IMG/VR virus record: IMGVR_UViG_3300038361_000164
Coordinates: 146,264 to 210,263 of that record
Reading direction: 5' to 3' (one strand)
Length of the DNA stretch: 64,000 nucleotides
Shown here: positions 4,997 through 59,214 of the stretch, piece by piece
How the letters are laid out: every line of letters starts with the position of its first letter
Numbering within the stretch: the first letter of the stretch is position 1
Notes under the pieces: generated by a model
The model's input: the letters and a program-made list of their open reading frames with translations, nothing else
The model's database searches: none
Told to the model about the DNA's origin: nothing
Made by a program: the position numbers and the translations under genes

Positions 4997-5169
4997 TGTT
5001 TCTTTTGGTTAAATGTCGTACATATCCTGAGGTGGATACTTTTGTTCTTCTATTATTTGATTGATCTTCTTATTAAGAAGCTTTTTTGTTTCTGTTGGAT
5101 TATCACTAACTATTCCTTCCTTAACTATAGTAACAATTTCCATTAGATGTGAATCGTCTAGTTTTATTT

Positions 5170-22900: not shown

Positions 22901-23977
22901 TACCCACGTTCCAATCTCTTTATCTTCCACGTTTTCATATTTATAATTACCTTTCATAACTTCACCTTCTCCAATAATTTCCCACCGGCTCAGAGAGTGA
23001 AGTCCAACGCTACATAAAAAATTTGTTAAATCAAACATCTATCTATACTCAACAATAATTCTATCAACACTTTTAGGTATCTTCCCAACCTGAATTACTT
23101 CACGATCTTCATGATCTGTAACCATACAGTCATCCAGGGATATCTCAACCCCGTCCTTGATATAACCCAATATGCAATCCTCCGAAATATCTTCTAGATC
23201 ATCTCCTGCAACCTTACCTTTGAAAAACTCGCTGGTCTCTTTTGGGTACGATAATCCATTCTCGATACAGAACTTTACAGCTCCATAATGTTTCTTAAAC
23301 TCTTCACTGTCTTTACTAGCAAACGCTGTTACGCTAATACTACATGACATATTAATTCTCCTACGTTAGTGTTTTCATTACATTGTTATTAATTAAGTTT
23401 TTTAATTCCCAAGATCTTAACATTTTCCCTTGAGATATTCCTTGTTCATATGCTTTTTGATACATTATTTCCAAAATATTTTTTATTTTGGCATTTCTTG
23501 GAATTGTCAGTAGGGTATCTGTGACATTATACCAATAATCATCTGGGTTTGTTATAGTTTTGTATGCAACTAGCCCTAACTTAAGTAATTGCTTATCAGT
23601 CATGGTAGCACCACCAGTATTGAATTACCATCATCCTCAGCCACTAGTGGTTTTTCAAAATACTCAGGATATTCTTTTACAAATACATCAAACCCTTTTT
23701 CTTCATATCCAATTAAATCACTGGTTATTGCAATCCATTTAAGCCCTTTGATCTTGCACCACTCTGCTATTGTTTTCACTTCCGAGTCTTTTATTCCACA
23801 ATCCCCTACAATCAGCTCATCTATTAAGACCGACTCATCTACACTTTCAGTTACATACATTCCTTTGTCAGAAGCATCCTGTTCGAGAATAGGTAATAGT
23901 TTATTGTATAACTCTTCACCATCAATAATTGCTACTAGTTCAGCATGATTCATACTTTCGTAAAAAACCTTAATCAT
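19948..23977 (-). CDS. Cluster of short early hypothetical genes
   Basis: Packed co-oriented ORFs with ATGA overlaps at 21963, 22477 and 23600; promoter motifs and hairpin/T-tract terminators between units. Confidence 0.6.
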
Positions 23978-27500: not shown

Positions 27501-28346
27501 AACTGTGTAATCTTCAAATGCTTCAACGCTTGTATGTATGTTATTTGTTAGTAGAGACAGACACGCAAGCATCAGTACTGCCACAAGTATTATTGTTGTT
27601 TTTGTCTTCATTTTTATTCCTTTATGTTTATGTTTATGTTTATGTTTACCTAAACCAAATCACAAGTGTAACATGTGTCATGGACACCTCTAAATTCGAA
27701 AGTGGGTCCTCCACATTTCTCACAGGTATATAACTACGAGTGTCTCTGACATATTTTCTCCTTTATTAAGGTGTTGTATCAATAAGGTTTTCCATTTCTC
27801 CTAAATAGGAAACGAAGTTTGCACCAATCATTTTACAGCTCTTGGCTTTACACCAAATGTTAAAGTTATCCATAAGCTCTATACAGGTGTCCTCCTCATA
27901 ACAAGTCAACACCTCTATTAATTCTATTAACTGCCCATTCATTTGTTTTCTTCCTTTTCTTTTTTATTTTCTTTTATTCTAAATTTTAATGGTGTTATGA
28001 AATCAGCACCAAGATCATCAGGTTTTAGGTATCTTAATTTTCTACTAAGAATATCTACAACCTTACGAGCAGTGATTTTCTCATCACGTTCCAAGGGAGT
28101 ATAATAATATGGGTTTATAACCTCACCAAGCATATTAGCAAGAGTGGGTTTAACATATTGTTCACAAAGCCTAGACAACACATTTACAAGATGTCTATTG
28201 CCTACCTCATCAAAAGGTAGGGCGCAATAACGACTATAAACACGTTTAAGCAAGTTATAGGAGTTATCCTTTTTTGTTGCTCGTATAAAGAGCATATCTG
28301 TTTTAGTCATTTCAATCCTTTCTAATTTATAAAAATCATCCGCCAA
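24530..28346 (-). CDS. Cluster of short early hypothetical genes, several membrane-spanning
   Basis: Packed co-oriented ORFs with SD-like motifs. Confidence 0.55.
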
Positions 28347-33065: not shown

Positions 33066-33172
33066 TTCTTTAATAAGTTTAAATCTTTAGTAATCTCTTA
33101 CTCATCATTCTTATACCAATTTTTGATAAAATAATCCTTTACACTTACACGGGAGTATTATATATTAACAAT

Positions 33173-33472
33173 ATGGACAAATCTACATATGTTTTCGAAA
33201 AGCTGGCGAATAAACTAAACAATAAACCACAATGAGTTAAGGACCTTGTTCCTGGAGCTGCATCTGGAGTGGTCACTAGTTTAATGTTTCACCCATTAGA
33301 TACGTTACAAGTGTTGAGACAAACAGAGAAAAAAATGCCTAACGTAACTTTAAAAAGATTGTATAAAGGGGTAGGATTAAAATTGTTAAAGCAAGTACCT
33401 ACTATGGCAGTAGGCTACGGTGTGTACGGTGCTACAAAACGATATGTGGAAAATAAGTCTTCGGTTACTTAA
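33173..33472 (+). CDS. Leader-bearing protein consisting of one mitochondrial-carrier (Solcar)-like repeat (TGA=Trp at 33233)
   Basis: MDKSTYVFEKLA...(W)VKDLVPGAASGVVTSLMFHPLDTLQVLRQ...LYKGVGLKLLKQVPTMAVGYGVYGATK. Confidence 0.7.
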
Positions 33473-41870: not shown

Positions 41871-42713
41871 ATGAAAATACCTTTTATAAAATACATCGAA
41901 GCTTGTTTAGTTTCTAGAAAAACGCTATCCCAGATTCTAAGAGATTTGGAATCGCACAGCCTATCTATTCCAGATGGAGTTATTGATATCATATACAAAC
42001 AACTTAGCAAAATTTATCCTGACTACTTCACAAATGTTACAGAGATAGCTCACGCCGATTGGTTACAGGAAATTGAAGTGGACAGAATGTATAGTCATAT
42101 TACTAAGTTTGAAGTTCCACGAGGAACTACTGGAATTGAAGGAACTTTTAAAATTTTAGAAGACCCAACAATGTATAGACTCGTCACAGCGTTAGCGATA
42201 GCACATATTACAGATGAAGATATCGAGCTAATTGTTAACGGTAAATTTAATGTTCAATACTCCTCTGAAGACATAAAAGAATTTTTACACTATTTCTTTA
42301 ATGTTGAAGGATGGACTGTTAACGATCGAAAAGAATATATCAGAACTGTTAAGGATAAAAATTTAAGAATGGCGTATAATCTGGCTATAGATAAACCTAA
42401 AGATTATCTTGTTTGAAAACTTGGTGCTTCTCCTGACAAAACATTTGATGAAATGCTCGAAGACATGACAAGAGATTCTTATTATAACTTCAAAGAGTGG
42501 GCAAGAGATAATCCCGAAACTGCGCAAAGATGAGGTACATTGGCTGTCAAACTAATGGATCGTCTCGACAGAGTTAAAAAAGATAGTAAAGATAAATCGG
42601 ACTTTTTTGAAGAGATTATTTTTAAGGTAGAGGCAATCAGATCTAAAGTACCTGCGCCTAGCGAAGATGGTTCGAAAAAGAGACATATTTCCGAATTAAA
42701 TGAAGACAATTAA
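41871..42713 (+). CDS. Hypothetical protein, possible terminase small subunit (2 TGA=Trp)
   Basis: Open through the TGAs to TAA at 42711; first gene of the operon containing terL; function inferred from position only. Confidence 0.4.
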
Positions 42714-43476
42714 ATTAGCAGGAATACTAGATACTCCGCAAAGAGCTTTAGCGAGCGATGTTTGATTGCCAATTAATGGTACCTATAAACTAATACCACA
42801 AATTAAAGAGCAAATTTTAAGCAAACTATATTCTTTTGTGCCTAAGGAAATGGTTCAACAGGTATTGATTTTAGGATCAATTACAGGATATAAATATAAC
42901 CCAACCTCAGATATAGATGTTAATGTTTCTATACTTCCATATGACCTAAGGTTTAAAGAAGCACGTCACGATATTAATGGGTTTTTGGCGTTCGGTACAA
43001 GACGTCCAGTTAACTTCTATTTTACTGAATACAAATCAGACACCGTCTGGAATACAGCAGTCTTTGGAGTTTATAGCATACGCACCGGAGAGTGGCTTTC
43101 TGAGCCGCCAGATGCCAGTACTATACGAGATCCAAAAATAGAGTTTTTACACTCAATAGCATATGCTAAAATAAAAACTAGACAATTTAATAGATTAGTT
43201 AATAATTATAAAACTAAACTACAACAATATCATAGAACTATGTCGAAAAAAACCTTAACAGCGGTAGATCATCTGATGGCGAATAGATATCACAGAAATA
43301 CAGCTGTAGCGTATAAACAAGTTTTAGATATGGCCAGAGCAATTGATCAAGATCGAAAATTTGATTATTACTGAAGCTGGGGAACTCCTAGAAATAGCTT
43401 TAGAAACATTATTTATAAACTTGTAGAGTACGGCCCTCACGGTAAACTCTTCGAGTATTTAAAGGAAATAGAATAA
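42700..43476 (+). CDS. Pol-beta superfamily nucleotidyltransferase (2 TGA=Trp)
   Basis: ILGSITGYKYNPTSDIDVNV (GS...DxD); N-terminal MKTIKLAG. Confidence 0.75.
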
Positions 43477-43488
43477 CCAACCATAACA

Positions 43489-43698
43489 ATGGCTAAACTT
43501 AATAAAGATTTTGGAACAAAAGTGTACGTTGATGGTCCGCAGGATTTCAATAAAGCAATGAGACGATGAATAAAACGCGTAGACAGTTGTGGAATTATAC
43601 AAGAAGTAAGAGAAAGACAGTATTTTGTTAAGGCAAGTACGCTAAAGAGATTAAAACGTAAGAAATGTCAAATCGTGAACAGAAGACAATACGGCTAA
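43489..43698 (+). CDS. rpsU: Phage-encoded ribosomal protein bS21 (TGA=Trp at 43567)
   Basis: VYVDGPQDFNKAMRR(W)IKRVDSCGIIQEVRERQYFVKASTLKRLKRKK matches the S21 pattern; not in the ORF track. Confidence 0.8.
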
Positions 43699-46340
43699 AA
43701 AGAAGTGAATTTGCGCAAGCTACCCTTTGATTAGCTGGCCAACCTTTTTCATTAGCGGATTATCCACACCTTGTAGACATTTATGACTGTGAGGCGGCTG
43801 AGCAAGTATTACAGTTCTCTCGTCAAACAGCTAAATCAACCACATTGGCAGCTATGGCTGTATCCAATTGTGCGATGATACCGGATTTTAAAAATCTTTT
43901 CATAGCTCCTACTGTAGATCAGTCTAAAGTATATAGTCACGATCGTGTGAATCCTTTCCTTAAAAGTCCTTTAATTGCCAGTAATTATATAAACAGCTCT
44001 GTCGTACAGAACGTGTTTATGAAAGAAATGACTAATCGCTCTAAAATGTATATTAGATATGCACTTCTTGACGCGGATCGCATCAGAGGCTACACTTTGT
44101 CTAAATCGTTTAATTATAACACCTTACGTGGATGAATTAAACCTGAAAATCTAACAAAAGATGACTGGGTTTTGACAAAAAACGAAGCAACAAACGAATT
44201 CGAATATCAGCAACCTACAGAAATAATAGATGAGCCTTATGAAGGTCCTATGCATATTTATAAACTTAGAAATAAGGTTATGATGGAGGTAACCCCAGAT
44301 CATCGAATGCATGCTGATATGTTAAAACAAAAACATAAAGGAGCTCCATTTGGAACAGGTTGGCAAACTGAAATCCGCTCTAAAGATATTCATACTAAAA
44401 ATTTCAGAATGGGAATAGGAAATCCAGGCGAAGGTTGGTACAAAGATTCCTCACCAGAATTTTTTGAATTACCCGAATTGAAAACCAACATTAAAGCAAA
44501 CGGACAACCTTATCAAGATGGTAAAATAAGAACGTATAGTGCAATAAAAATACCTATCAAACCTTTTATGATATTTATGGGATGATGACTCGCAGAAGGT
44601 TGAACAGCACTTGATTCCATTACTATCGGAGTGTGTCAAGATAAGAATCATAACTTAGAGCACTGAACGGAAATTGATAATATAATGAAAGAGTTATTTC
44701 CAAAACATATTATTAGCAGTAATTCAATAACTTCTTGGAACTGTAGTTCCGAATACCGTACTTTATACGAATGACTAAAACCTCTTGGCAAGTCTGGGGA
44801 TAAATATATACCCAGAGAACTTCTTGAATATACCAAGTACTTGCCGGATTTGTTAGATGCGCTTTATAAAGGCGATGGAGATAATGTAAAAAATGGTAAA
44901 GTAAAATCTACTCACAAAGAATATTTAAGACTTTCTACCAAGTCTAGCGCTTTAGCAGATTCTGTACAAGAAGCTTGACTACGTTTAGGAAAATGAGCAT
45001 CTGTAAATCATCGTGACAGAAAATACGGACGCACATACACAGTTGAAGTGAGATCTCGAACTTATGGAAATTGGTTATTAAATAAATATAAAAAAACTAA
45101 GCACAAATATTTTGAAGAAAAACATTATAAAGGAAGGATTTATTGTGTAGTGGTGCCCAATGGAAATTTTGTAATGCGCCATGAAAATTCTAAAGTTCCT
45201 TTTATAACAGGCAACTCAGCAGATCAAAATAATTTTGATGAGTGCCAGGACTTACTACCAGACATTATTCCTGTTGTACAGGAAACCATGTCACGTTCTA
45301 CCTACAAATGGACTACATATTCCGGAACACCAAAACGTACTCGCGGAACTTTGGCCGATATATGGCACCGTTCTACGATGAATGAATTTGTTCTTAAATG
45401 TACTTCTTGTAATCATTGAAATATTCTTGCAGAAGACAATATCGGACCGACTGGTGTAATCTGTAGCAAGTGTAGCGCAGACATAGATGTAAGGCAAAAA
45501 GCAGAATGGGTGTCTACTTATTCTTTAACTCAAAAACCGGATCTAGAGGGATTTAGAGTGTGTGCTTTACACTTTGCAAAAGCTCCATGAGTTAATTGAG
45601 AAAAAGATATACTAGGAAAACGCAAAGTATACTCAAAGGCAAAGTTTCAAAACGAAGTATTAGCCGTAGAATATGATTCAGGCGTTAGCCCTATTACAAA
45701 GGATCAAGTAAAACGAGCCTCAACTGGACCACAGTATCACACAGAACCTCTAGGCATTGACAGTAGTTATGTGTCCATTATGGGAGTAGATTATGGTCCT
45801 GTGAATTCAGAAAATTCAAATACAGTAATTTCAATTGTTCAACAAAGAGGCCATGGGCTTGAAGTAGTGTTTGCCAAGAAGTATGTTGGCAAAGAAGCGG
45901 ATTATGCTTTCATACATAAAGATATTCCTAGATTAATGAAAAAATGAAACTGTGTGCAACTTGCAGCGGATTATGGAATGGGCGATGCTCCCAACTCCGA
46001 AATCCGATCGAAAGTGGGCTATCAAAAAGTTGTTGCTTTCCAAAATTTGCAATCACAAAAACAAGAAATACAATGAAATCCGAAAATGCCAGCGTATACG
46101 CTGAACAAAACCAGAGTGTTAAATAAGTTTTTTCGACAAATTAAAAGAGGTCAATTAACTTTTCCAGAATATCACAGTTTTGTGGACTTTACAGAAGATT
46201 TATTAAATGTACAAACAGAGGCAGACGAATCTTTGGGCACTATTAAATATATTAATATTGGTCCAGATGATTTTACATATGCTACATTGTACGCAACAAT
46301 TGCGGCAACTCTTTATTTTAAAATCGATTGGGCCGATTAG
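43665..46340 (+). CDS. terL: Terminase large subunit (gpA-like) with intein; about 14 in-frame TGA
   Basis: SRQTAKST Walker A, RIRGY|SAD..FDE Walker B, SGTPK, CxxC zinc finger, FQNEVLA, MGVDYG, AADYG, GPDD nuclease motifs. Confidence 0.9.
44094..45215 (+). mobile_element. 374-aa intein with LAGLIDADG homing endonuclease inserted in terL
   Basis: Starts TLSKSFNYNTLRG(W); block B VTPDHRM; FMG(W)(W)LAEG and LDALYKGDG; ends IYCVVVPNGNF...ITGN|S. Confidence 0.85.
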
Positions 46341-46391
46341 TTTATTAAAATAATACTTGACACTTACATGACGGGAGGATATATTTAAATT

Positions 46392-47791
46392 ATGTATACA
46401 TCTCTAGATCTTGAAACCTTTGGCAAACAAATATCTGAGCAGCATTTTCAGACAAAGGAATCATTGACTTCACTTTTATCTAAAGTAGCTTCTTCTCACG
46501 AACTTACCTCGCAACAAGTTCATCGAGTAGCGGAATCCGCTAATATAGATACTTATCTAAATATGATGAAAACAGCCGAAGAAAAATATATTAAATTTGA
46601 AGTTGCAGATCCAATTGCAGTAGCTCACGGCCAAACACAGGTAGTGAAAACTGCAAGTGTTGTTACTAATTATGATTATAACACCTCTTTGGAAGATCAT
46701 TTGCATGATCTTATTCCTTCGGCAGAAAAAACAGCTGAAGAAATAACTATACCAGAACCTACTAATACAGAAATGCAGAAAGAAGCTGGCCTTAAACTAG
46801 GAGCTGTTATTAGAAAAGAAAATCATTTATTAGACGATCAACTTATTATTGCAAGCGAATTTGACAGTATAGAAGGGTTAGTAAAACAAGCACTGTTGGG
46901 CGGAACCTCTTTTAGCGATATTGCTCATGTACTTAAAGTAGCAGCTCCTATTTCCAATATGGGACTAATCACACACATAAAAGCAGATCTAGAAAAAAAC
47001 ATTCCACACCATAACTTTGAAGTTGCTTCATGCGACAGAGACCTTAGAACAGATTCTAAATTATATAAAAAAGCTGCGGCTTTTGATAAATCTGTAGATA
47101 CCCTTATTACTAAGGTAGCTGAGTATACAGAAATCTTACAAGACTATGTGACTTATGTACAAGATAAAGAATTACCAATTTTACATAAAGAAGCTGGTGT
47201 TTTGAAGAAGGTTAAAAATGTAGGTGAATTTGTAGGAAAACACAAAGTAATGTCTACTATGGCTGTGTTTGTTCCGGTCTCTTATAAAGCGGGAAAAGAA
47301 AAAGGCAAAAGAGATATGTCTAAAAATATTAAAGTTATAAAGGGGAACAAATAATGTCTACAATACCTAAATTTACACAATCCAAAATGTTCAGTCGAAC
47401 CGTGAGCTCATTAGCAATGGTAGGACTTGCTTTTTTTGCAGATGCAGTTAGAGACGCATTACATGCTACTGGACAAAAAAGAAAATCTAGAAAATTCTTT
47501 GAACAAATGTTGGAACACCACCCTCAATTGCAAAAAGAAAAACCAGAGATAGTGGCTAAGTATTGGGCATCTTTAAATCATTTTGCACCATATATGGCTC
47601 AAGAGCCAATGGCTGCTGGTGCATATATTAGACAGTCTATTCAACGAGGTTATCAAGAAGAATTTGGTGGCCCACCTCCTGATACATTTTCCACTTTAAC
47701 AGATATAAATAAAAAACTTAGTGATCAAAAGAAAAAAGGACCTTCCGAATTAGTACAGTATGCCTTAAAGGGTTCTGGATTAATAAACTAG
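46392..47791 (+). CDS. Two head-morphogenesis proteins (46392-47354, 47354-47791)
   Basis: Between terL and the protease; many K-x-A motifs in the first. Confidence 0.55.
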
Positions 47792-47803
47792 GTATTCAAA
47801 TAA

Positions 47804-49534
47804 GTGACCGATATTGGATTTAATAAAACTGTAGATTTTCTCTATGGAGACAACCAATCTGAAGTATTTCAGCCGTTGACTGCTAATATTGGATTAGAAA
47901 AAACCGCAGGATACTCTGAAGAACTGCAACAATATGTAAATTCTCTTAAACCAGCTTCTGGAAAAACATATGCGTTAGTAAACGCATTATCAGCTGGTGA
48001 ATACTTTGGTGAAAATCGAAACAGAGACTACTTTCCAGAAAAAGCTTTACAACAATATCACAAAACATTCGAAGCTTTAGGACATATATATGAGCATCAT
48101 GTAAATAAAGATCCTAGAAGAGCTCTTGGTAAAGTTTCATTTTCACATTATAATAATATGATGAAAAGAGTTGAACTTATATTAGAACTTATCGAATCCA
48201 AAGCACAACATATAATTAAAAGATTACACGCAGGCGAGTTGCCGGCGGTTAGTATGGGCTGCAGAGTTCCTTTTGATGTGTGTTCCATATGCGGAAATAA
48301 GGCGAAAACACGAGCACAGTATTGTCATCATTTAACAAAAAAGATGGGACATGTGTATCCAAATGGGCAAAAAGTATATGCCATTAATACCATGCCTAAA
48401 TTTTTTGATATTAGTATCGTAACCATTCCTGCAGATAAAACAGCTAGTTTCATTTCAGAATTACTAACGAGCTCAGGATCTAGACGTTCAATACGGCTTA
48501 ATGATTTCAATCAAAGAGACAGTGCTGCCGTACGTTTACAAAAAGTAGCCGAACTTTCCAGCGTTGCAGATATAAAAAAGAAAATTGATGTAGAAGTTAC
48601 AGCAATTGATAAAGATCCTAAAAACTTAATTTTGGAATCTCAAAAACGTCTTTCAAAAGATCAGCTTGAGAAGTTATCAAAATTCCCCCTTAGTGCTACC
48701 TTATCCACAATGCTGGGATTGAGAATTGTTCCAACTAAAGAAGATTTTCAAAAATTAGCACTATATGCTTCTGGACATAAAAAATTAGCAATACAATTGG
48801 AAGAACAAAATATTGTATTTGACTCCGACGATGAGGCAAAAGATCTAACAGATGTCGGACTTAATAATTATAATAAAAAAATAGCAGAAGTGCTAAAAGA
48901 AGACATACCAAACATGTCTTTAACAAAACCCTTGATTGTTAAACGAGGAATTGCTTATATTCAAAAAACGGCCGTAGATAATTCTACTCCTTATACTACC
49001 GGACAAACAAAAGACAGAAGTTTGATTGGTAAAATGTTTTTTGGACAAAAAGAAGAACCAACTTTAACACCACATCGTAATCCCATAGTACCTCTTGGAA
49101 TTCTTGGAGCTCTGTATAAGGGATATGTGAAAATATTTAACAATAGTACAACTGGATTTAGGAAATTTTTACGAATCCATCCGTGGCTATTACCAGTGCT
49201 TGTGGGTGCCGGAACGGCAACATCCCTTGGAGCACAACAACTGGTTTTTAATAAAACAGCCGGCTGGGTAGACCGCTTTGTGGCTTCATCTCTATTAACT
49301 GTTCCTGCTTCATATTTTGCTGCAGGAGTACAAGAAGATAAAGCAATTAAAGGAAAACCAATCAGTCGTTTTGAAAATTTTGTTAGAAAACACCCATTAA
49401 TAATGGGAGTGACTTCAGCTGGAGTTATTGGAAAAGGAACTCATAAAGTTAAAAAACTATTTAAAACAGCTGAATTGATATCGAGAATGAGTCAAGAAAA
49501 CCTTGACATCATTTATAAAGAACTTATATATTAA
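47804..49534 (+). CDS. Prohead maturation protease with long C-terminal extension
   Basis: NRNRDYF, EHHVNKD, VSMGCRVPFDVCSICG, FFDISIVTIPAD (HK97/assemblin-like His and Ser motifs with Zn-finger insert). Confidence 0.75.
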   Translation: MTDIGFNKTVDFLYGDNQSEVFQPLTANIGLEKTAGYSEELQQYVNSLKPASGKTYALVNALSAGEYFGENRNRDYFPEKALQQYHKTFEALGHIYEHHVNKDPRRALGKVSFSHYNNMMKRVELILELIESKAQHIIKRLHAGELPAVSMGCRVPFDVCSICGNKAKTRAQYCHHLTKKMGHVYPNGQKVYAINTMPKFFDISIVTIPADKTASFISELLTSSGSRRSIRLNDFNQRDSAAVRLQKVAELSSVADIKKKIDVEVTAIDKDPKNLILESQKRLSKDQLEKLSKFPLSATLSTMLGLRIVPTKEDFQKLALYASGHKKLAIQLEEQNIVFDSDDEAKDLTDVGLNNYNKKIAEVLKEDIPNMSLTKPLIVKRGIAYIQKTAVDNSTPYTTGQTKDRSLIGKMFFGQKEEPTLTPHRNPIVPLGILGALYKGYVKIFNNSTTGFRKFLRIHPWLLPVLVGAGTATSLGAQQLVFNKTAGWVDRFVASSLLTVPASYFAAGVQEDKAIKGKPISRFENFVRKHPLIMGVTSAGVIGKGTHKVKKLFKTAELISRMSQENLDIIYKELIY

Positions 49535-49556
49535 ACACAACGGGAGGTAAAACCGA

Positions 49557-50682
49557 ATGGCTAAGAACCAAGAATGGTCTGTCGACACAATTGTTAGTGA
49601 ATTAGAAAGCACTATTGAAAAGGATGCCGGCGCAAAAATGATCGAAAATGTGTTAAACGATGTTCCTGAAGAAAAAGTTGAAGAAAAGACAGCTGAAGAG
49701 GTAACTGAAGAAGTAACTGAAGAAGTAACTGAAGAAGTTAAAGAAAAAGTTGCCGAAGAAGTGACTGAAGAAGTTGTAGAAAAGACAGCTGAAACTCTTG
49801 AATTAGAGAAAGAAGCACAACGTTGGGAAGATGGTGGACGCATTTTTGCTAATAGTATGTTAGCAAGACTAAACGAACAAGCTACAGAAACAGTAGAAAA
49901 AGTTGCTGAGGAAGTTAATAACTCCGAAGAAGTGACTGAAGAAGTTGCTGTAGAACAATCTGAAATTTCCGAAAAGGTAGCAGAAGCTCTTGTCGGATTA
50001 ACTAAAACCTATTTAGAGGAGTAATATAACATGGGTGAACTATACGACACATGGAAAGAAATGAGCACAGAAAAGGTAGCAGAAGAAGAAGTAGCTATCG
50101 ATGATGGACAAGAAATTCTTGCTAAATTTGCTGAAACAGCTGACGTTCTTTTAGAAGAAGAATTTGGCGAAGATTACGATGCAAATGATGTTGAAAAACT
50201 AGCTGGATTATTAATTGAACATGCTCAAAACGAAGAATTGATGCAAGAAAAAATTGCAGAAATGGACGACTTTGCTGACATAGTAGCTGAAAAAGTTGCT
50301 GGTATGTTTGTAGAAGAATACGAAGAAGACTAGTAATTAGTAAATGGATTCTACTTTGAAGAAAAAAGCTCTCTTCGCTATAGGAGAGCTTAATAAACAG
50401 CTACACGAAGTTGAAGGTAAACTTCGCGACAAGACTGATGAATTGGAATTGCAAAAGCAAGCTCAATCATTAGCCTTTAACATGTTTAAAAAAGGTAGTA
50501 TAGCTGTTGAAGATTTAGAATCTACTATAAATGAGTATAGCACAAAGGGCCAGGAAGAGCTCGTTATTTTGGAAAAAGTAGCTGAGATAAGTTCTGGCCA
50601 GGGATATAAACTTGGTCGCGTAAGCGATCTAGACACATCTGGATTAGGCCAACCCTTATTGGATTGGATCATTTCAGATTAA
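49557..50682 (+). CDS. Acidic scaffolding-like proteins (49557-50024, 50031-50333, 50344-50682)
   Basis: EEVT repeats and EKTA/EKVA/EKIA motifs; located between protease and capsid genes. Confidence 0.6.
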
Positions 50683-50695
50683 TAGAGGAACATAG

Positions 50696-51145
50696 ATGTT
50701 AAAACTATTATCACATCTTACCCGCATAGAGAGAGTAGAAATGCTTCTAGATTCTCAGGGTTGGGTGTTAGCCTCAGGTGTTATAGGTTCATGGGTTTCT
50801 CCTGCAGGAGCTGGTTTAGTTAATAAACCACTCGCTGGTGATTTTGGCTGGCCAATATGGTCAGAAAGTGTTCGTGATAGCAATACAGCAGGATTCTCTC
50901 CTGATATTGCAGCTACGGGCAAAATCACTGTACTGTACGGAAAAGTACGTGCCTTAACAGATCAATTTACCGGGTCCCCAACTGTGGGAGCGGCGCTTTA
51001 TATCGCTGCAGATGGTACATTAAGCGTAACTTCAGCAGGTGATGCTGTTGTAGTTGCTTATTGCACAAAATCGGCCTATAACATAACAACATATTACAAT
51101 AAAGCAAGAAGCACTACTAGTGTTATCGAGTTTTATACTGTATAA
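50696..51145 (+). CDS. Capsid decoration/cement protein
   Basis: Directly upstream of the MCP; VGAALYIAADGTL...VVAYCT beta-rich pattern. Confidence 0.6.
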   Translation: MLKLLSHLTRIERVEMLLDSQGWVLASGVIGSWVSPAGAGLVNKPLAGDFGWPIWSESVRDSNTAGFSPDIAATGKITVLYGKVRALTDQFTGSPTVGAALYIAADGTLSVTSAGDAVVVAYCTKSAYNITTYYNKARSTTSVIEFYTV

Positions 51146-51160
51146 TTAGGAGGATAAATT

Positions 51161-52096
51161 ATGTACTCAGCAAATCAAATTAATGAGATGTTCGTACAGA
51201 AGCTAAACGCTCCTGACGGTATAGAGAAATTCGCAGCCGAAGGTGCAGCTTTTGTAAGACAAAAACTACGTGAAACAGCGTTTAGTCGTATGATTATAAA
51301 TCCACAATACGTTACTAAAGTTGATTTAACACGTTCAATCAATCACGACGGTTTAGTTAAAATCGTTGACATCGAACCAGAAAGCAAAGCTATGACTATT
51401 AACATGCGTGGTGAACCAGATTCACATTACGTTATGGGTGATAGATTTGAGATTCCTTTCCATGGAATTAGTTCAGAAGACTTCCAAAAAACTGAAGAAG
51501 AGTTGCTAGCTTACGAAATGCCTATTACAGACATCATCGAAAAGAACTCAGTACTTGATATTCAGAGAATTGAAGACGAAACATTCATGGCATTGGTCGA
51601 CGCTGCAATTGCAGTAGAAGAAGCTATTTCTGCAGGATCCAAAACAATTACAGGTACTTATGTATCTACAGGCGAAATTGGTTCCATCAAGAAGAGCGAT
51701 CTTAAGAGCTTATTTGACACGCTCGATGGTGACGAACTACGCTGTGATCTTTTACTTATGGACTCAACTATGTATAATCGCTTATTCCTATATAATGCGA
51801 CTACAGTAGGTGATGCAGTAGGATCAGAAGTTACAGTTAACGGATATACGTATAAGACCTTATTCGGTCGTAGAGTAATTGTTTCTAACAAGAAACTTAA
51901 CCAAGCAGGGTCTAACTTCTTGAACAACAAGATTTATGCCTTTACTTCTCAAGAATTCTTGGGTCAGTTCTGTATCTTAAACGATACTCAGTTCTGGATC
52001 GAAAAGAAGAAAAACATAATCTCTTGGGCAGCTTACGAGCATATTGGAATTGGTATCGGAAATACACGTTCTTGCTCAGTAATGAACTTGAGTTAA
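51161..52096 (+). CDS. Major capsid protein (HK97-fold, inferred)
   Basis: 311 aa, strong AGGAGG RBS, codon usage of a highly expressed gene, followed by a terminator, canonical position. Confidence 0.8.
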   Translation: MYSANQINEMFVQKLNAPDGIEKFAAEGAAFVRQKLRETAFSRMIINPQYVTKVDLTRSINHDGLVKIVDIEPESKAMTINMRGEPDSHYVMGDRFEIPFHGISSEDFQKTEEELLAYEMPITDIIEKNSVLDIQRIEDETFMALVDAAIAVEEAISAGSKTITGTYVSTGEIGSIKKSDLKSLFDTLDGDELRCDLLLMDSTMYNRLFLYNATTVGDAVGSEVTVNGYTYKTLFGRRVIVSNKKLNQAGSNFLNNKIYAFTSQEFLGQFCILNDTQFWIEKKKNIISWAAYEHIGIGIGNTRSCSVMNLS

Positions 52097-52115
52097 AATA
52101 CACCACAACACTAAA

Positions 52116-52146
52116 GAAAGGCCGGTTTTTTACTGGCCTTTTTTTT
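52116..52146 (+). terminator. Rho-independent terminator after the MCP gene
   Basis: AAGGCCGG...CTGGCCTT stem followed by a T run. Confidence 0.8.
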
Positions 52147-52191
52147 ACTTCTTCTTGACCAACCCACCCTACTTAACTATATTAAAGTATT

Positions 52192-52542
52192 GTGTTAGTA
52201 CTAAATGTTACATATAAAGCTAAAATAGAGGAAATTAGCCAAGATCCAGAAGTATTTCCAGTTGTAAAAGCTGGGTGCTGGGGATCAGAAACACTAACTT
52301 TTGCCTCTGACATAGCAGCACTAACTTTTGTACAAACACATTTTCGTGCCAAATTTGTTGAGGAGCTTGTTGCCACTACCATACTGAACCTCACTACTGC
52401 GTACCAATTAGTAGATGATAGTACCAAAAGCGCAATCTTGAGTAGTTTACTAACCCAGAATTTTGGCTTAGGAGATTTAACAGCAGGAAGTGCGACTGTA
52501 ACAGAACTAGGTTCAGGCGAGACCCAAATTAACAAAATATAG
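52192..52542 (+). CDS. Hypothetical virion protein
   Basis: ORF following the promoter at 52155. Confidence 0.5.
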   Translation: MLVLNVTYKAKIEEISQDPEVFPVVKAGCWGSETLTFASDIAALTFVQTHFRAKFVEELVATTILNLTTAYQLVDDSTKSAILSSLLTQNFGLGDLTAGSATVTELGSGETQINKI

Positions 52543-52551
52543 GAGTAAGCA

Positions 52552-52923
52552 ATGGCTACAACTACAGTTTATTTAAAACGACATGACTTGCGTCCAGCGT
52601 TAGACATGCAACTAAAAGATGGAGATGCTAACGCGCTCAATGTCAGCACAGCTATTGCTACCTCAGTGACCTTCATTATGAAAGATATAGCAACTGGCAC
52701 TGTTAAAGTTGAAGCCGCATGCACCTTACTTGAACCTACAGACATTACAAAAGCAAATGGATATGATGGAAGGGTACGCTATCAATGGCTCTCAGGTGAT
52801 ACGGATACTGCTGATACCTACTTAGGTGAGTTTGAAATTTTATATACAGATGGGCAAAAACTTACAGTTCCGACTGTTGATGTTTTAGCAATCGTGATCT
52901 TGGAGGACTTTAATAATGGCTAA
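52552..52923 (+). CDS. BppU N-terminal-like (Ig-like) virion domain protein
   Basis: LKRHDLRPAL...GRVRYQW..GDTDTA..YLGEFEI.Y.DG..LTVP. Confidence 0.65.
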   Translation: MATTTVYLKRHDLRPALDMQLKDGDANALNVSTAIATSVTFIMKDIATGTVKVEAACTLLEPTDITKANGYDGRVRYQWLSGDTDTADTYLGEFEILYTDGQKLTVPTVDVLAIVILEDFNNG

Positions 52924-54693: not shown

Positions 54694-57600
54694 ATGCAAA
54701 ACATAAAAGGTGTTTTTGCTCATACAAGCTTTATAGGAAACTCTGGATATGCTTCACATGCCAGAAATTTTTTCACCAAACTAAATAAACATATCTCAGT
54801 AAAGATACGTAATTTTTCCATAGGAACTCATTGGGACGGAGTGTATAGAGCTGATCCTCATAAAGAGGAACCTTACCTTACAGACCAACATAGAGAAATG
54901 CTTGTCACACAAATTTGTATGAATGAGCCAGGAGAAATGATTGACCACGATCTGTATGGAGGCCCTCCCGATTTAACAAATTTTGTTAACATAATTCTTC
55001 ACGAAAGCCTACACCACAACTATTACCATGATTATAAAGGATTTAAGATAGCATATAATGTTTGGGAAAGCACTGAGCAATCTCCAGACTTTTTTGAAAA
55101 ACTCTTAGAATATGATCAATTATGGGTACCAACTCAATGGCAGCGGGATTGTAGCATAGCGCAAGGATACCCGGCTGAGCGTGTTTTTGTTGTACCAGAA
55201 GCAGTAGACAATGAGGTGTTTAACTTAACGCCAGTAGCACCATTAGAAGAGATGAAAAACAATCGTTTTAAGTTTATGATTTTTGGTCGTTGGGATCATA
55301 GAAAAGCTACTACAGAAATGATTAAAGCATTTTTGGAAGAGTTTTCAGCAGACGAACCTGTAGAACTTATCTGCTCTATAGATAATCCCTATCCCGTAGA
55401 TGGTTTTAAATCAACGCAAGAACGATTAAATCATTTTGGCTTTAACGACCCTCGTTTAAAAATAAAAAGCTTTATCAGTAGAGATGATTATATTAACTAC
55501 TTGAAGAATGGAAATGTTTTACTTACATGCTCTCGCGCGGAAGGTTGGAATTTGCCATTAATAGAGGCAATATCTTGTGGCACTCCGACTATATGTTCCA
55601 GCCACCCAGCTCAACTTGAGTTTGCCACTGATGTATCTTGCCAAGTTCGTACCAAAGAACAGCGTCCAATGAAGCCTTTTATGTTTGCCCCAGACGGCTC
55701 TGGTCTATGGGATGAGCCAGATTTTGAACATTTAAAGGAAGTTATGCGCGATGTATATAATGATTATAACAAATATAAAAAGAAAGCTATAAAAAATGCT
55801 ACAATAGTATCTAACAAATTTACATGGGAAAATGCAGCTGAAAAAGCTGTTACAATTTTAGAACAAATAGACAAAAATATGAATAATATACCTACATTAA
55901 AAAAAGAAAAGAAAGCTTATGTATTAAGCACAGATGAAAAATATTTACCATACGCTAAATTGTGTGTTGAGAGCTTGCTAATGTTTGATAACACAGATGT
56001 AATCGTATATGTAATTAACGCCGACAAAGAGCTTGACTGGGGCTGGTTAACACATCGAATAGATATTCGCCCAATTAAAACAGATTTTTCCTGGAACGTG
56101 GACGGACTACAAAATCCAGGTCATTACTATGCGCGAATTATCTCAGCTATAGATTGCCTAAAAAGAGACACACATCAAAGCTATATGTTTGTAGACGCAG
56201 ATATGATAGCGGGTAAAGATGTTTCCTATCTTTGGGAATACAAGAGCATGTTACAAGACTATCCATTATGTATTCAATATAATTCACCAAACTGGTATCA
56301 ATGGAGAGAAGTAGATGGTATTAAGTATAACGCAAGTTATGGAAAAGAAACCTCTGAAATTCTAAATGAAGGTATTCGTAAAAGTAACTCACACATAGCT
56401 GCAACCGGTTTTTTTCTATTTGATATTGAAAGTATGGAGTTTTTATCTGAAGTCTTAGATGTGTATAATACACAAAGACAAGGAATAACTTGGAATGTGA
56501 AAGATTCACATGGGAAAAATATATTTGTAGATGATAATGCTTTATCAGAGGAGCGAGTGTTAAACTATCTTATGTGGAAGTATAAGAGAAAAGCAGTTAT
56601 GCCTGTTACCTGGAATTTTCCAAAAGAATCTCCTATAAAAGATAGGTTTAATGATAAGCAATTGTTAGCATTAGATATGGGAAACTTTTCAGTAATGTAC
56701 GATATGAGTAATAATAAATTTTACGGAGCACATCCAGAACCTGGTGAAGGAAAAAATGTAGAGTATTCTAAAGATTTGTGGAAGAAATTTAATCCCAATC
56801 GTCGAAAGAATTTAATGATTGTAGCGCATCTTGATGATGAAACTATATTTGGTGCGGGCACTCTTTTAAAGAACCCTAAAGATTGGCACATTGAGTGCAT
56901 GACAGGTGCTGATGACAAACCACGTATGAATGAGTTTTATTCAGCGCTAGAGACACTTGGTATGGAAAGTACAGGCGTTTCTAATTACACAGATAGCTTA
57001 GAATATCCATTTCCAGAGGATGCAAAATATCACATTGAACATCTTTTAGCTGTCAATGACTACGAGATGGTGGTAACACATGGAGAAGAAGGTGAGTATG
57101 GTCACGTACAACATGTTAGTCTTCATAACATTGTTAAGGACTGTAATCCTAAGGGTTTACATTTTTTTGCGTTAGGAACAGAACCTCTCGATGCTGAAGT
57201 ATATAAAAAGAAACAAGAAGCTTTGGCTCACTATAAAAGCCAAGTAACTGATTTGCCAGGATTTCATAAGTATTTAAGATATGAAACAATTGTACCTGCC
57301 GGCACACAAAGCAAAAAGAAAAAGTTTGAGAAATCAGACTTCCTTAAAGATTTTAAACCGAAGGAAGCTGAAATTACGCCTTTTAAACAAATAACCATAA
57401 ACCATAATTTTATAAATGGCCCTTTTGTAGAAATACTTGGAGATGATCCAGCTCTTTTTTCTATAGAAATGAAAAACAATGACGTATTAATACATTCTAC
57501 ACAAATACATTCAAATCATTGGACTGTTGCAAATATAAAACATTATCAGGATTGGAATATCGAAATTAGTAAAGATGGCAAAATTATTGAAACACTATTG

Positions 57601-59214
57601 TTTGATGCAAAAAATAAAAACGTCTTTATTCACTTTGATAGTGCCGCTTTAGGAGATACAATAGCGTGGTTGCCCTACGTAGAAGAATTTGCGGAAAAAC
57701 ATGGCTGTAAAATGTATTGTTCCACTTTTCATAACAAGCTGTTTGCTGCAGAATATCCAAATATTACTTGGGTCGTTCCCGGAGCTACAGTTCAAAATTT
57801 GTATGCTTCTTATGAAATAGGGTATTTTGCAGATATAAGTAAACATCCAAATAATCCTAAGACTATTCCTTTACAGCAAATTGCTACAGATTTATTAGGA
57901 CTGGAATATCAAGAAAAGCGACCTAGAATTACTATATTAAAAAATAATAAACTTACGAGTAGTCCACATGTGTGTATAGGAGTACAATCTACAGCTCAGG
58001 CCAAGTATTGGAATTATTCAGGTGGTTGGGATTTGGTGGTTGATCACTTAAACTCTGTTGGATATAAGGTTTATGATATTGATCTTCATAAAGAATTTGG
58101 ACGCTATCCTCAACATATGAACGTTATTCCACAAAATGCAATCGATGTAACCGGTTCATATACATTATTAGAGCGTGCGGCGCAACTATCTCATGCTAAA
58201 TTTTTTGTGGGGCTTGGCTCAGGCCTTTCCTGGCTAGCGTGGGCTGTAGGCACACCTGTGATATTAATATCTGGGTTTAGTGCTCCTTTTACGGAATTTC
58301 AAAAAGGAGTTACACGTGTACACGAGGATAACGGCTGTCATAGTTGCTTTTCGAATCCAAAATATACTTTAGATAAGGACAACTGGGAATGGTGTCCAGA
58401 GAATTTAGATTTTGAATGCTCTAAAAGAATAACTCCTGAACGTATAATACGCACAGTTGATTATGAACGATTGGACAGAACACATTTGGAAGATGGAGGT
58501 GATTTTTGGCTAAGAGAGGAGCAATTGGAATACGCCAGTTATAACAAATGGTATACACCAAAAGATGGCGATGTGGTCGTAGATATAGGAGCCTCTATAG
58601 GTATATATCCTGCTTTAAATCTTCAAGGAATTGATTTAAAAGCCTGTTACTATATAGAGCCGCTATCTTATAACTTAGAGAGTTTGCGTAAAAATATACA
58701 GGAGTTTTTTCCTGATAATAAAAAGCACATTATTGAAGCCTCTGCGATAAGCACTGAAAATGGAGAAGAAATGATCGCAGGCGATTCAACGTGGTCTCCA
58801 GAACTTATGCGCTACAAAGACAATGATGCAGTTCCAGGAGAGATGGTGAAAACGATCACATTTTCACATTTTATTAACAAGTATCAGATTGAACGAATTG
58901 ACATGCTAAAAACAGACTGCGAAGGCGGCGAGTATGCTCTTTTCTTAGATGATAAGAACATGGAAATTTTACAAAAAACTACTAGAAATATGACAGGTGA
59001 GCTACATAAACACATTGAACCTTACTCAGGTGCTTTTATTGCGATGTTACTGCAATTGGATAAATATGGGTTTGAATACGATGTATTAAGTATAGATGGA
59101 TTTCCTATAAAAGAAAATCTTTTAAATAATGTCTTTTTAGAAGACAAGCAACTACATGCAATGGATTTTTATAGACAAGTAATATTCTTTGCGAAAAACA
59201 AAACACTTGCTTAA
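54694..59214 (+). CDS. Five-domain glycan-modifying enzyme: GT4 + GT-A (DxD) + PIG-L deacetylase + autotransporter-type (Aah/TibC-like) heptosyltransferase + FkbM methyltransferase
   Basis: SGYASH...RAEGWNLPLIEA; FVDADM; AHLDDE...HGEEGEYGHVQH; SAALGDTIAW...GSGLSWLAW...CHSC...C...C; VDIGASIG...KTDCEGGEY. Confidence 0.8.
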   Translation: MQNIKGVFAHTSFIGNSGYASHARNFFTKLNKHISVKIRNFSIGTHWDGVYRADPHKEEPYLTDQHREMLVTQICMNEPGEMIDHDLYGGPPDLTNFVNIILHESLHHNYYHDYKGFKIAYNVWESTEQSPDFFEKLLEYDQLWVPTQWQRDCSIAQGYPAERVFVVPEAVDNEVFNLTPVAPLEEMKNNRFKFMIFGRWDHRKATTEMIKAFLEEFSADEPVELICSIDNPYPVDGFKSTQERLNHFGFNDPRLKIKSFISRDDYINYLKNGNVLLTCSRAEGWNLPLIEAISCGTPTICSSHPAQLEFATDVSCQVRTKEQRPMKPFMFAPDGSGLWDEPDFEHLKEVMRDVYNDYNKYKKKAIKNATIVSNKFTWENAAEKAVTILEQIDKNMNNIPTLKKEKKAYVLSTDEKYLPYAKLCVESLLMFDNTDVIVYVINADKELDWGWLTHRIDIRPIKTDFSWNVDGLQNPGHYYARIISAIDCLKRDTHQSYMFVDADMIAGKDVSYLWEYKSMLQDYPLCIQYNSPNWYQWREVDGIKYNASYGKETSEILNEGIRKSNSHIAATGFFLFDIESMEFLSEVLDVYNTQRQGITWNVKDSHGKNIFVDDNALSEERVLNYLMWKYKRKAVMPVTWNFPKESPIKDRFNDKQLLALDMGNFSVMYDMSNNKFYGAHPEPGEGKNVEYSKDLWKKFNPNRRKNLMIVAHLDDETIFGAGTLLKNPKDWHIECMTGADDKPRMNEFYSALETLGMESTGVSNYTDSLEYPFPEDAKYHIEHLLAVNDYEMVVTHGEEGEYGHVQHVSLHNIVKDCNPKGLHFFALGTEPLDAEVYKKKQEALAHYKSQVTDLPGFHKYLRYETIVPAGTQSKKKKFEKSDFLKDFKPKEAEITPFKQITINHNFINGPFVEILGDDPALFSIEMKNNDVLIHSTQIHSNHWTVANIKHYQDWNIEISKDGKIIETLLFDAKNKNVFIHFDSAALGDTIAWLPYVEEFAEKHGCKMYCSTFHNKLFAAEYPNITWVVPGATVQNLYASYEIGYFADISKHPNNPKTIPLQQIATDLLGLEYQEKRPRITILKNNKLTSSPHVCIGVQSTAQAKYWNYSGGWDLVVDHLNSVGYKVYDIDLHKEFGRYPQHMNVIPQNAIDVTGSYTLLERAAQLSHAKFFVGLGSGLSWLAWAVGTPVILISGFSAPFTEFQKGVTRVHEDNGCHSCFSNPKYTLDKDNWEWCPENLDFECSKRITPERIIRTVDYERLDRTHLEDGGDFWLREEQLEYASYNKWYTPKDGDVVVDIGASIGIYPALNLQGIDLKACYYIEPLSYNLESLRKNIQEFFPDNKKHIIEASAISTENGEEMIAGDSTWSPELMRYKDNDAVPGEMVKTITFSHFINKYQIERIDMLKTDCEGGEYALFLDDKNMEILQKTTRNMTGELHKHIEPYSGAFIAMLLQLDKYGFEYDVLSIDGFPIKENLLNNVFLEDKQLHAMDFYRQVIFFAKNKTLA

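What the first reader, a model, noticed from the sequence alone, without database searches (positions are those of the whole stretch)
43489..43698. Hidden bS21 ribosomal protein overlapping terL and gated by an in-frame TGA
Seen: a 69-aa S21-like ORF missing from the track, overlapping the terL start. Known: phage bS21 genes occur near core structural genes and are expressed late. Inference: it is produced only after the code switch and may retune initiation toward late mRNAs.
Basis: partly seen in the sequence, partly recalled or inferred. Interest (0 to 1): 0.6.

Follow-up and report, generated by a model that had tools for sequence, protein, structure and literature searches.

The report
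Phage S21 gene coupled to terminase
A large uncultured marine phage that reads the stop codon TGA as tryptophan in part of its genome carries a real copy of ribosomal protein bS21 just upstream of, and overlapping, its DNA-packaging gene; the gene is genuine, but the TGA inside it comes from the phage's codon usage and is not a dedicated switch.

Summary
Window 43489-43698 (+) is a 69-codon ORF with one in-frame TGA (codon 27, 43567-43569). Read with TGA=Trp it matches Ribosomal_S21 above Pfam's cut-off, and its last 34 nt overlap the only usable start of terL (43665).

TGA=Trp is well supported. In terL, TGA falls on invariant Trp columns. In S21, it falls on the conserved aromatic residue of the RRF motif.

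The genome (210 kb, seawater) is dual-coded. In the early-like minus-strand block, TGA behaves as a stop. In tail, baseplate, terL and S21 genes it is a sense codon.

The "gate" is not specific to S21. I found 37 distinct S21 genes in this phage family, and 29 overlap or abut terL. Fifteen of them sit in standard-code relatives. Only 4 of the 22 in recoded relatives have a TGA inside the S21 domain, each at a different position.

What is conserved is the S21-terL coupling, not the TGA. No tRNA(UCA), release factor or TrpRS gene was found, so the decoding mechanism is unexplained. The role in initiation is inferred and untested. This is a new member of known kinds (phage bS21; TGA-recoded phages).

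The parts
43489..43698 (+). bS21 homologue gene: 69 codons plus a TAA stop. Product P0001 when TGA is read as Trp.
   Evidence: PF01165 35.1 bits against a gathering score of 27. PHROG 21469. Solved bS21 chains at E 1e-15 with profile A1. AF2 model with pLDDT 85.8 and helices at 17-34, 36-44 and 49-68.
43567..43569 (+). In-frame TGA at codon 27, read as Trp. It sits at the aromatic position of the conserved A-x-R-R-F-K-R motif.
   Evidence: In alignment A1 this column is mostly F, with some L and one W. In the terL alignment, TGA codons sit on invariant W columns.
43665..43698 (+). 34-nt overlap between the 3' end of S21 and the 5' end of terL, in different frames. Probably a site of translational coupling.
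   Evidence: Read from the sequence. ATG 43665 is the only in-frame start upstream of the conserved terL N-terminus. An overlap or abutment is seen for 29 of 37 distinct S21 genes in the family.
43665..46340 (+). Large terminase gene: 891 codons, 14 in-frame TGA, TAG stop. Product P0002.
   Evidence: PHROG 675 terminase large subunit at E 2e-49, and PF05876 GpA_ATPase. Alignment with relatives.
44094..45215 (+). Intein-like insertion in terL: residues 144-517, 374 aa, with a LAGLIDADG domain and 8 of the 14 TGA codons.
   Evidence: PF14528 LAGLIDADG_3. Absent from intein-less relatives at the RGY|SAD junction. Relatives have Cys at position 1 where this phage has Thr, and all end in GN followed by Ser.
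42700..43476 (+). Upstream gene of 258 codons with 2 TGA, function unknown. In S21-less relatives its homologue abuts terL directly.
33138..33175 (+). Sigma-70-like promoter (TTTACA-17-TATATT) carrying an ACTTACA..GGGAG motif. It ends 6 nt before the ATG of the first + strand gene of the block that runs through S21 and terL.
   Evidence: The motif occurs twice in the window against 0.03 expected.
46357..46394 (+). Second promoter of the same design (TTGACA-17-TATATT), immediately after terL. It heads the TGA-free head-gene block.

Best explanation
The ORF is a functional phage gene for a homologue of small-subunit ribosomal protein bS21. It lies in a roughly 210-kb uncultured marine phage that decodes TGA as Trp in one set of genes (terL, S21, ligase, DnaJ, baseplate, fibres) and treats TGA as a stop in its early-like gene block. 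The single TGA in S21 replaces the conserved aromatic residue of the RRF motif. So the full protein is made only when UGA is decoded as Trp. Before that, translation would stop after 26 residues.

The gene ends inside the start of terL. The two are therefore most likely translated as a coupled pair from one mRNA. That arrangement is the conserved trait of the whole phage family, in standard-code and recoded members alike. The TGA is a by-product of recoding in some lineages, not a device aimed at S21.

By analogy with tested phage bS21 (incorporation into 70S ribosomes, Mizuno 2019, PMC6375957; co-expression with structural genes, Chen 2022, PMC9723584), the product probably replaces host bS21 on the 30S platform and biases initiation toward phage mRNAs while packaging genes are expressed.

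Shown here: homology, the identity of the TGA codon, the overlap, family-wide synteny and dual coding. Inferred: translational coupling, timing, ribosome incorporation and any effect on initiation.
For: S21 family matches and a helical model. TGA means Trp: of the residues aligned to TGA codons in terL, 90 of 159 are W, and six columns are all or nearly all W. The TGA column in S21 is F, L or W. Identical sequence occurs on 13 independent contigs.

Dual coding: in the minus-strand block at 84.5-179 kb, 15 of 131 ORFs end in TGA. Read-through there runs only 1-25 codons, and there are no internal TGA. Elsewhere a TGA is followed by hundreds of open codons. A rough probability that 15 sense TGA would all fall in the last 25 codons is about 2e-12.

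Synteny: S21 lies directly upstream of terL in 37 distinct relatives, 29 of them overlapping or abutting, 22 recoded and 15 standard-code. terL has no Shine-Dalgarno sequence of its own (-2.9 kcal/mol), which fits coupling.
Against: There is no direct evidence of expression. Metatranscriptome contigs with this phage cover the head gene 46392-47354 and part of the terL intein, but not S21. The TIGR00030 score is just below its equivalog cut-off. The KPS motif reads KAS. Foldseek found bS21m as its top hits, but only at E above 0.5. No UGA decoder was found: no tRNA(UCA), release factor or TrpRS. So the assumed switch has no identified agent. The block containing S21 is headed by a sigma-70-like promoter, so its timing could be early or middle rather than late.
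Confidence: 0.75

Rival explanations
1. One reading: the TGA is a dedicated timing gate, selected to keep S21 off until the code switch, after which S21 redirects ribosomes to late mRNAs.
For: In this phage the TGA does make full-length S21 depend on UGA decoding. The genome is dual-coded. TGA-bearing genes have somewhat weaker Shine-Dalgarno sequences than early genes: median -1.8 against -5.4 kcal/mol, p = 0.048.
Against: The TGA is not conserved. The nearest relative has Phe at that codon. Only 4 of 22 S21 genes in recoded relatives have a TGA inside the domain, at HMM positions 13, 27, 44 and 56. Fifteen S21 genes are in standard-code relatives. The highly expressed head genes are TGA-free with strong GGAGG Shine-Dalgarno sequences, so 'late' does not equal 'TGA'. 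The Shine-Dalgarno contrast is marginal (p = 0.048 and 0.08).
Confidence: 0.12
2. There is no switch. The host itself reads TGA as Trp (code 4), so S21 is made whenever its mRNA is present.
For: No phage tRNA(UCA), release factor or TrpRS gene was found. That is what one expects if the host supplies the decoding.
Against: The early-like block has no internal TGA despite hundreds of TGG codons. It uses TGA at the end of 15 ORFs, each backed by a nearby TAA or TAG. Close relatives in the same family use the standard code. From my own knowledge, I know of no free-living marine bacterium with code 4.
Confidence: 0.06
3. The S21 homologue has been recruited for DNA packaging. It would act as a small basic nucleic-acid-binding partner of the terminase, sitting where small-terminase genes usually sit, and would not act on the ribosome.
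For: Its position immediately upstream of and overlapping terL is conserved in 29 of 37 family members. No recognisable small terminase was found among the neighbouring genes. The protein is very basic (pI 10.5; the C-terminal domain has 8 K/R and no acidic residue).
Against: The sequence keeps the S21 family signature along its whole length. S21-less relatives package DNA with the same terL and the same upstream 245-aa gene. A tested phage bS21 enters ribosomes (PMC6375957).
Confidence: 0.05
4. It is a decaying pseudogene or a chance ORF interrupted by a nonsense codon.
For: Under the standard code it is cut after 26 codons.
Against: The profile match has E 1e-8. The flanking genes hold 2 and 14 TGA at Trp positions. 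Intact orthologues exist in 37 relatives. The sequence is identical in 13 independent assemblies.
Confidence: 0.02

Closest known systems
Phage-encoded bS21 of freshwater Bacteroidetes phages (Chen et al. 2022, PMC9723584) and of pelagiphage HTVC008M and many uncultured viruses (Mizuno et al. 2019, PMC6375957)
   Same: A bS21 homologue carried by a large phage and placed among the terminase and head genes. The proposed role is replacement of host bS21 during production of virion proteins.
   Different: Here the gene is on the same strand as terL and overlaps its start, whereas Chen et al. describe it on the opposite strand. The family is marine. The protein is very divergent: tblastn found no match in 50,697 GenBank phage records, and the best outside homologues are 40-50% identical. 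Part of the family is TGA-recoded, and neither paper mentions that for bS21 phages.
Stop-codon-recoded phages with TGA read as Trp (code 4: the Jade, Sapphire and Agate clades; Borges et al., bioRxiv 10.1101/2021.08.26.457843)
   Same: In-frame TGA at Trp positions. Standard-code-compatible early genes. Close standard-code relatives. Genome size around 200 kb.
   Different: The habitat is seawater, not gut. No tRNA(UCA), RF1 or TrpRS was found. Instead there is a tRNA-Trp(CCA) plus a tRNA(CUA), although TAG still acts as a stop. Head genes are TGA-free, while terL and the tail genes are TGA-rich.
Bacteroidetes-type bS21, which sequesters the anti-Shine-Dalgarno sequence (Jha et al. 2021, PMC7797042)
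   Same: Same protein family and the same place on the 30S platform.
   Different: The C-terminal domain here is strongly basic (pI 11.6). It has Ile, not the signature Tyr, 12 residues after the KPS-equivalent Ser. It therefore resembles the Shine-Dalgarno-permissive type of Proteobacteria and Firmicutes. About half of the phage genes carry a Shine-Dalgarno sequence.

Membership tests
bS21 (Pfam PF01165 Ribosomal_S21 / NCBIfam TIGR00030) | Sequence matches the family profile above the curated cut-off | tested here: met
   PF01165: 35.1 bits against 27, covering profile positions 2-50 of 55. PHROG 21469: 33.2 bits. Profile A1 against solved bS21 chains: E 1e-15.
bS21 (Pfam PF01165 Ribosomal_S21 / NCBIfam TIGR00030) | Reaches the stricter NCBIfam equivalog cut-off | tested here: not met
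   TIGR00030: 28.2 bits against a cut-off of 28.95. It is marginally below, so it is a divergent member and not a typical cellular rpsU.
bS21 (Pfam PF01165 Ribosomal_S21 / NCBIfam TIGR00030) | Small size (about 55-90 aa), a short N-terminal strand followed by helices, and a basic C-terminal tail | tested here: met
   69 aa. AF2 pLDDT 85.8 with helices at 17-34, 36-44 and 49-68. pI 10.5. The Foldseek top hits are bS21m chains, but only at E 0.5-1.2.
bS21 (Pfam PF01165 Ribosomal_S21 / NCBIfam TIGR00030) | Binds the 30S platform and is part of the ribosome | not testable with these tools
   This needs ribosome purification and mass spectrometry, or cryo-EM.
TGA-to-Trp recoded phage (code 4, phage-driven) | In-frame TGA at conserved Trp positions of core genes | tested here: met
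   terL alignment: TGA falls on invariant W columns in five recoded relatives. ORF coverage rises from 0.73 to 0.88 genome-wide when TGA is read as sense.
TGA-to-Trp recoded phage (code 4, phage-driven) | Early genes are compatible with the host's standard code | tested here: met
   The early-like block has no internal TGA. Fifteen ORFs end in TGA with only 1-25 codons of read-through.
TGA-to-Trp recoded phage (code 4, phage-driven) | Phage-encoded suppressor tRNA(UCA). Borges et al. detected one in only about 35% of code-4 phages, so it is not obligatory. | tested here: not met
   Aragorn at default and relaxed settings and Rfam RF00005 find 26-36 tRNA-like genes. These include Trp(CCA) and a CUA anticodon. 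The only UCA candidate is a poor one with a broken acceptor stem and no T-loop.
TGA-to-Trp recoded phage (code 4, phage-driven) | Recoded codons concentrated in late structural and lysis genes | tested here: inconclusive
   Baseplate J, collagen-like fibre genes, terL and S21 are TGA-rich. The head-gene block and a 1506-aa glycosyltransferase are TGA-free. No expression timing is available.
Bacteroidetes-type bS21 that sequesters the anti-Shine-Dalgarno sequence | A weakly basic C-terminal domain and the signature Tyr (Tyr54 in F. johnsoniae) | tested here: not met
   The C-terminal domain TLKRLKRKKCQIVNRRQYG has pI 11.6. The position 12 residues after the Ser of KAS is Ile.

The most novel reading that the evidence does not exclude
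In this marine phage family, bS21 is an obligate translational partner of the terminase: terL is initiated only by ribosomes that have just made S21. In the recoded lineages, UGA is decoded without any dedicated UCA tRNA, through the phage's own tRNA-Trp(CCA) together with an unknown block of RF2. S21-modified ribosomes would be part of that late translation regime. That would link a viral ribosomal protein to a change of genetic code.
Probability: 0.08. Interest if true: 0.8.

Novelty: new member of a known kind. Interest (0 to 1): 0.42.

Why it matters
Phage bS21 genes and stop-codon recoding in phages are each already described. This locus joins the two in a habitat (seawater) and a phage family that have no cultured relatives. 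It also gives a clean set of natural comparisons: the same S21-terL module occurs in standard-code, recoded and S21-less relatives.

The conserved overlap with terL is a testable case of a viral ribosomal protein translationally coupled to a packaging enzyme. Clear TGA-to-Trp recoding without a tRNA(UCA) raises the question of how the code is changed.

For annotation, the practical point is that table-11 gene calling hides S21 and shatters terL in these genomes.

Tried and rejected
- **TGA as Gly (code 25) or selenocysteine.** Rejected. TGA aligns with Trp or aromatic residues, and there are 359 in-frame TGA genome-wide.
- **TAG recoding, suggested by the tRNA(CUA).** Rejected. Extensions past TAG have a median of 7 codons, like those past TAA at 9.
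- **S21 presence tied to recoding.** The first sample of 14 terL sequences suggested it. The wider survey showed S21 in 15 standard-code relatives. All that remains is that every recoded relative with upstream sequence has S21, and that all 10 S21-less loci use the standard code. This may simply reflect phylogeny.
- **A distinct leader motif for TGA-bearing genes.** k-mer enrichment showed only depletion of AAAGGA, and the gene set contained spurious antisense ORFs. The cleaned Shine-Dalgarno comparison was marginal.
- **Host identification.**
  - The word-based protein search found only the query itself.
  - Cluster names were uninformative.
  - GenBank phages show terL identity of 26% or less and no S21 match.
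With P0001 it gave one 28-residue match in a Planctomycetota MAG, which is not informative.
- **RNA evidence.** The only two RNA runs hold a few 150-220-nt contigs, none on S21.
- **Fold search.** Foldseek against the PDB gave no significant hit.
- **Not attempted.** Complex prediction was not used, because I do not claim that S21 and TerL bind each other.

Full report
**What is in the sequence.**
- Window 43489-43698 (+) starts with ATG, ends with TAA and has one in-frame TGA at 43567-43569, which is codon 27.
- Under table 11 nothing of 30 aa or more is open in that frame.
- With TGA read as Trp it gives a 69-aa protein (P0001).
- The next gene, terL, is open from ATG 43665 to 46340 only if its 14 TGA codons are read through (P0002).
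- ATG 43665 is the only in-frame start ahead of the conserved N-terminus, so the two genes overlap by 34 nt.

**Is it S21?**
- P0001 scores 35.1 bits against Pfam Ribosomal_S21 (gathering score 27).
- It scores 33.2 bits against PHROG 21469, 'ribosomal protein S21'.
- It scores 28.2 bits against TIGR00030, just under the 28.95 equivalog cut-off.
- An exhaustive HMMER search of 1.8 billion representatives found only 40 hits at E of 0.001 or better. The best is 55% identical and the rest about 35-50%.
- The alignment of these hits (A1) shows the family motifs: RRF/WxKR, G-I-x-x-E-V-R-E-R-Q-Y-F, and K-[PA]-S. As a profile it hits solved bS21 chains at E 1e-15.
- AlphaFold gives a confident model (pLDDT 85.8) with three helices.
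- Foldseek ranks mitochondrial bS21 chains first, but not significantly. That is expected for an extended protein that folds on rRNA.
- I file it as a divergent member of bS21.

**What TGA means.**
- In A1 the TGA column holds the conserved aromatic residue. It is mostly F, with some L and one W.
- I aligned terL from 14 relatives with TGA masked. TGA falls on columns that are otherwise all Trp. Of 159 residues aligned to TGA codons, 90 are W.
- Gly (code 25) and selenocysteine do not fit this pattern.
- The exact 69-aa protein, TGA included, is found on 13 contigs from independent assemblies.

**The genome and its two coding regimes.**
- The window is the last 64 kb of a 210,263-bp IMG/VR virus record, rated 99% complete, with 36% G+C.
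- Reading TGA as sense raises ORF coverage from 0.73 to 0.88.
- TGA-bearing genes cluster in a few places: genome 19.6-27 kb (-), 42-84 kb (+), and window 34-46 kb and 53-62 kb (+).
  - The 42-84 kb block holds a baseplate J protein, glycosyltransferases and a 1803-aa collagen-like fibre protein.
  - The window blocks hold a ligase, a DnaJ-domain protein, DUF5662, S21, terL and a GNAT acetyltransferase.
- The long minus-strand block of small genes at 84.5-179 kb has no internal TGA. Fifteen of its 131 ORFs end in TGA, and read-through there would add only 1-25 codons. Elsewhere a TGA is followed by hundreds of open codons.
- If TGA were a sense codon everywhere, the chance that all 15 would sit in the last 25 codons is of the order of 1e-12. 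This is a rough figure.
- The genome therefore mixes standard-code genes with TGA=Trp genes. That is the pattern Borges et al. describe for phages that change the code during infection of a standard-code host.
- Full-length S21, like terL, needs the TGA=Trp regime.

**What does not fit the simple 'late equals TGA' picture.**
- The head-gene block right after terL (window 46392-52923) and a 1506-aa multi-glycosyltransferase (54694-59214, 32 TGG) have no TGA. The relative L009 shows the same split.
- The block that contains S21 is headed by a sigma-70-like promoter at 33138-33166. A near-twin promoter at 46357-46385 heads the head genes.
- Timing is therefore unknown.
- The phage occurs in seawater metagenomes from many studies. 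Two metatranscriptomes hold a few short contigs of it, on the head gene 46392-47354 and in the terL intein, but none on S21.

**How UGA is decoded is unexplained.**
- The genome has a tmRNA and 26 tRNAs by Aragorn, or 36 tRNA-like matches by Rfam.
- These include tRNA-Trp(CCA) and a tRNA with anticodon CUA, but no credible UCA tRNA.
- No release-factor or class-I TrpRS domain was found.
- TAG still behaves as a stop.
- A second recoded family member examined across its tRNA regions (G001) also has Trp(CCA) and a CUA tRNA. A standard-code, S21-less relative (G004) has neither.
- This is two genomes against one, so it is a lead and not a result.

**The family view, which decides the interpretation.**
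- Searches with the 576-aa head-block protein and with a terL profile returned about 90 related viral loci.
- An S21 gene lies upstream of terL on the same strand in 37 distinct sequences. In 29 it overlaps or abuts the terL start, in 6 it is within 300 nt, and in 2 it is further away.
- Twenty-two are in contexts where TGA must be sense, defined as a coverage gain of 0.1 or more. Fifteen are in contexts that read well under table 11.
- Ten loci, about six distinct, lack S21, and all of them use the standard code. In those, the homologue of the 258-aa upstream gene abuts terL.
- Within the S21 domain, TGA occurs in only four recoded lineages, at HMM positions 13, 27, 44 and 56. Some others have a TGA in an N-terminal extension.
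- The closest relative (L009: S21 55% identical; the N- and C-terminal terL segments 85% and 77% identical by tblastn; also recoded) has Phe at codon 27 and no TGA.
- The conserved, selected feature is thus the S21-terL coupling. The TGA is a lineage-specific consequence of recoding.
- A terL tree could not resolve how many times S21 was lost or recoding arose.

**Function.**
- From the literature, a pelagiphage bS21 enters E. coli 70S ribosomes (PMC6375957). Freshwater phage bS21 is transcribed together with structural genes (PMC9723584).
- The C-terminal domain of this protein is strongly basic and lacks the Bacteroidetes signature Tyr. It is therefore of the type that allows Shine-Dalgarno pairing.
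- About half of the phage's genes have a Shine-Dalgarno sequence.
- S21 itself has none (+0.2 kcal/mol). It has an A/C-rich leader with an AACCAA-like motif that recurs in relatives. terL has none either.
- TGA-bearing genes have somewhat weaker Shine-Dalgarno sequences than early genes or TGA-free late genes. After I removed doubtful ORFs the contrast was marginal (p = 0.048 and 0.08).
- I conclude that ribosome modification during virion-gene expression is the most likely role. It remains an inference.

**Host.** The host is unknown. No cultured phage is close. The S21 homologues are all metagenomic. The single genome-collection scan was uninformative. The dual coding and the Shine-Dalgarno usage point to a standard-code bacterium that uses Shine-Dalgarno sequences.

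**Verdict.** It is a new, divergent member of two known kinds, with a conserved coupling to terL and an unidentified decoding mechanism as the points worth following.

Noticed in passing
window 44094-45215 (+), inside terL: terL carries a 374-aa intein-like insertion with a LAGLIDADG domain at the RGY|SAD junction. It holds 8 of the gene's 14 TGA codons. Relatives with the insertion begin it with Cys, but this phage has Thr at position 1. It ends in Gly-Asn followed by Ser. Most family members lack the insertion.
   Followed up: partly
genome 115365-115439 (-) and 109296-109371 (-), outside the window (locus L042): There is a tRNA with anticodon CUA (an amber suppressor) and a tRNA-Trp(CCA), but no UCA tRNA, in a genome that recodes TGA and not TAG. 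The recoded relative G001 has the same pair. The standard-code relative G004 has neither.
   Followed up: partly
L042 6131-6211, 10628-10703, 6990-7100 and 7397-7464 (genome about 110.1-114.7 kb, - strand): Two tRNA-like genes align to the Rfam tRNA model without a D-arm, have a long extra arm, and carry anticodons UCU and ACG. Two further elements resemble Y RNA-like YrlA but score below the gathering threshold.
   Followed up: no
window 33138-33175 and 46357-46394 (+): Two near-identical sigma-70-type promoters carry a shared ACTTACA..GGGAG spacer motif. In each, the -10 box ends 6 nt before the ATG of the next gene, so these mRNAs may be leaderless.
   Followed up: partly
window 46392-52923 and 54694-59214 (+): The head-gene block (several genes with strong GGAGG Shine-Dalgarno sequences) and a 1506-aa protein with several glycosyltransferase, deacetylase and methyltransferase domains (32 TGG) contain no TGA at all, although they sit between TGA-rich genes. 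The relative L009 shows the same pattern.
   Followed up: partly
window 61866-63998 (+), open at the window end, and genome 1-100: A collagen-repeat gene runs off the end of the record, and the first bases of the record also encode Gly-X-Y repeats. The assembly probably broke inside this repeat, so the genome may be circular or circularly permuted. A second collagen-like protein of 1803 aa lies at genome 68512-73923.
   Followed up: no
genome 104475-104855 (-), locus L042 476-856: The phage encodes a tmRNA (Rfam 88.8 bits) with the predicted tag GKTQFALAA.
   Followed up: no
window 3458-3865, 5164-5727, 21550-21966, 23576-23977 and 27927-28346 (-), among others: Early-like genes that end in TGA have a TAA or TAG 1-25 codons downstream in frame. 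These could act as back-up stops once UGA is being read as Trp.
   Followed up: partly
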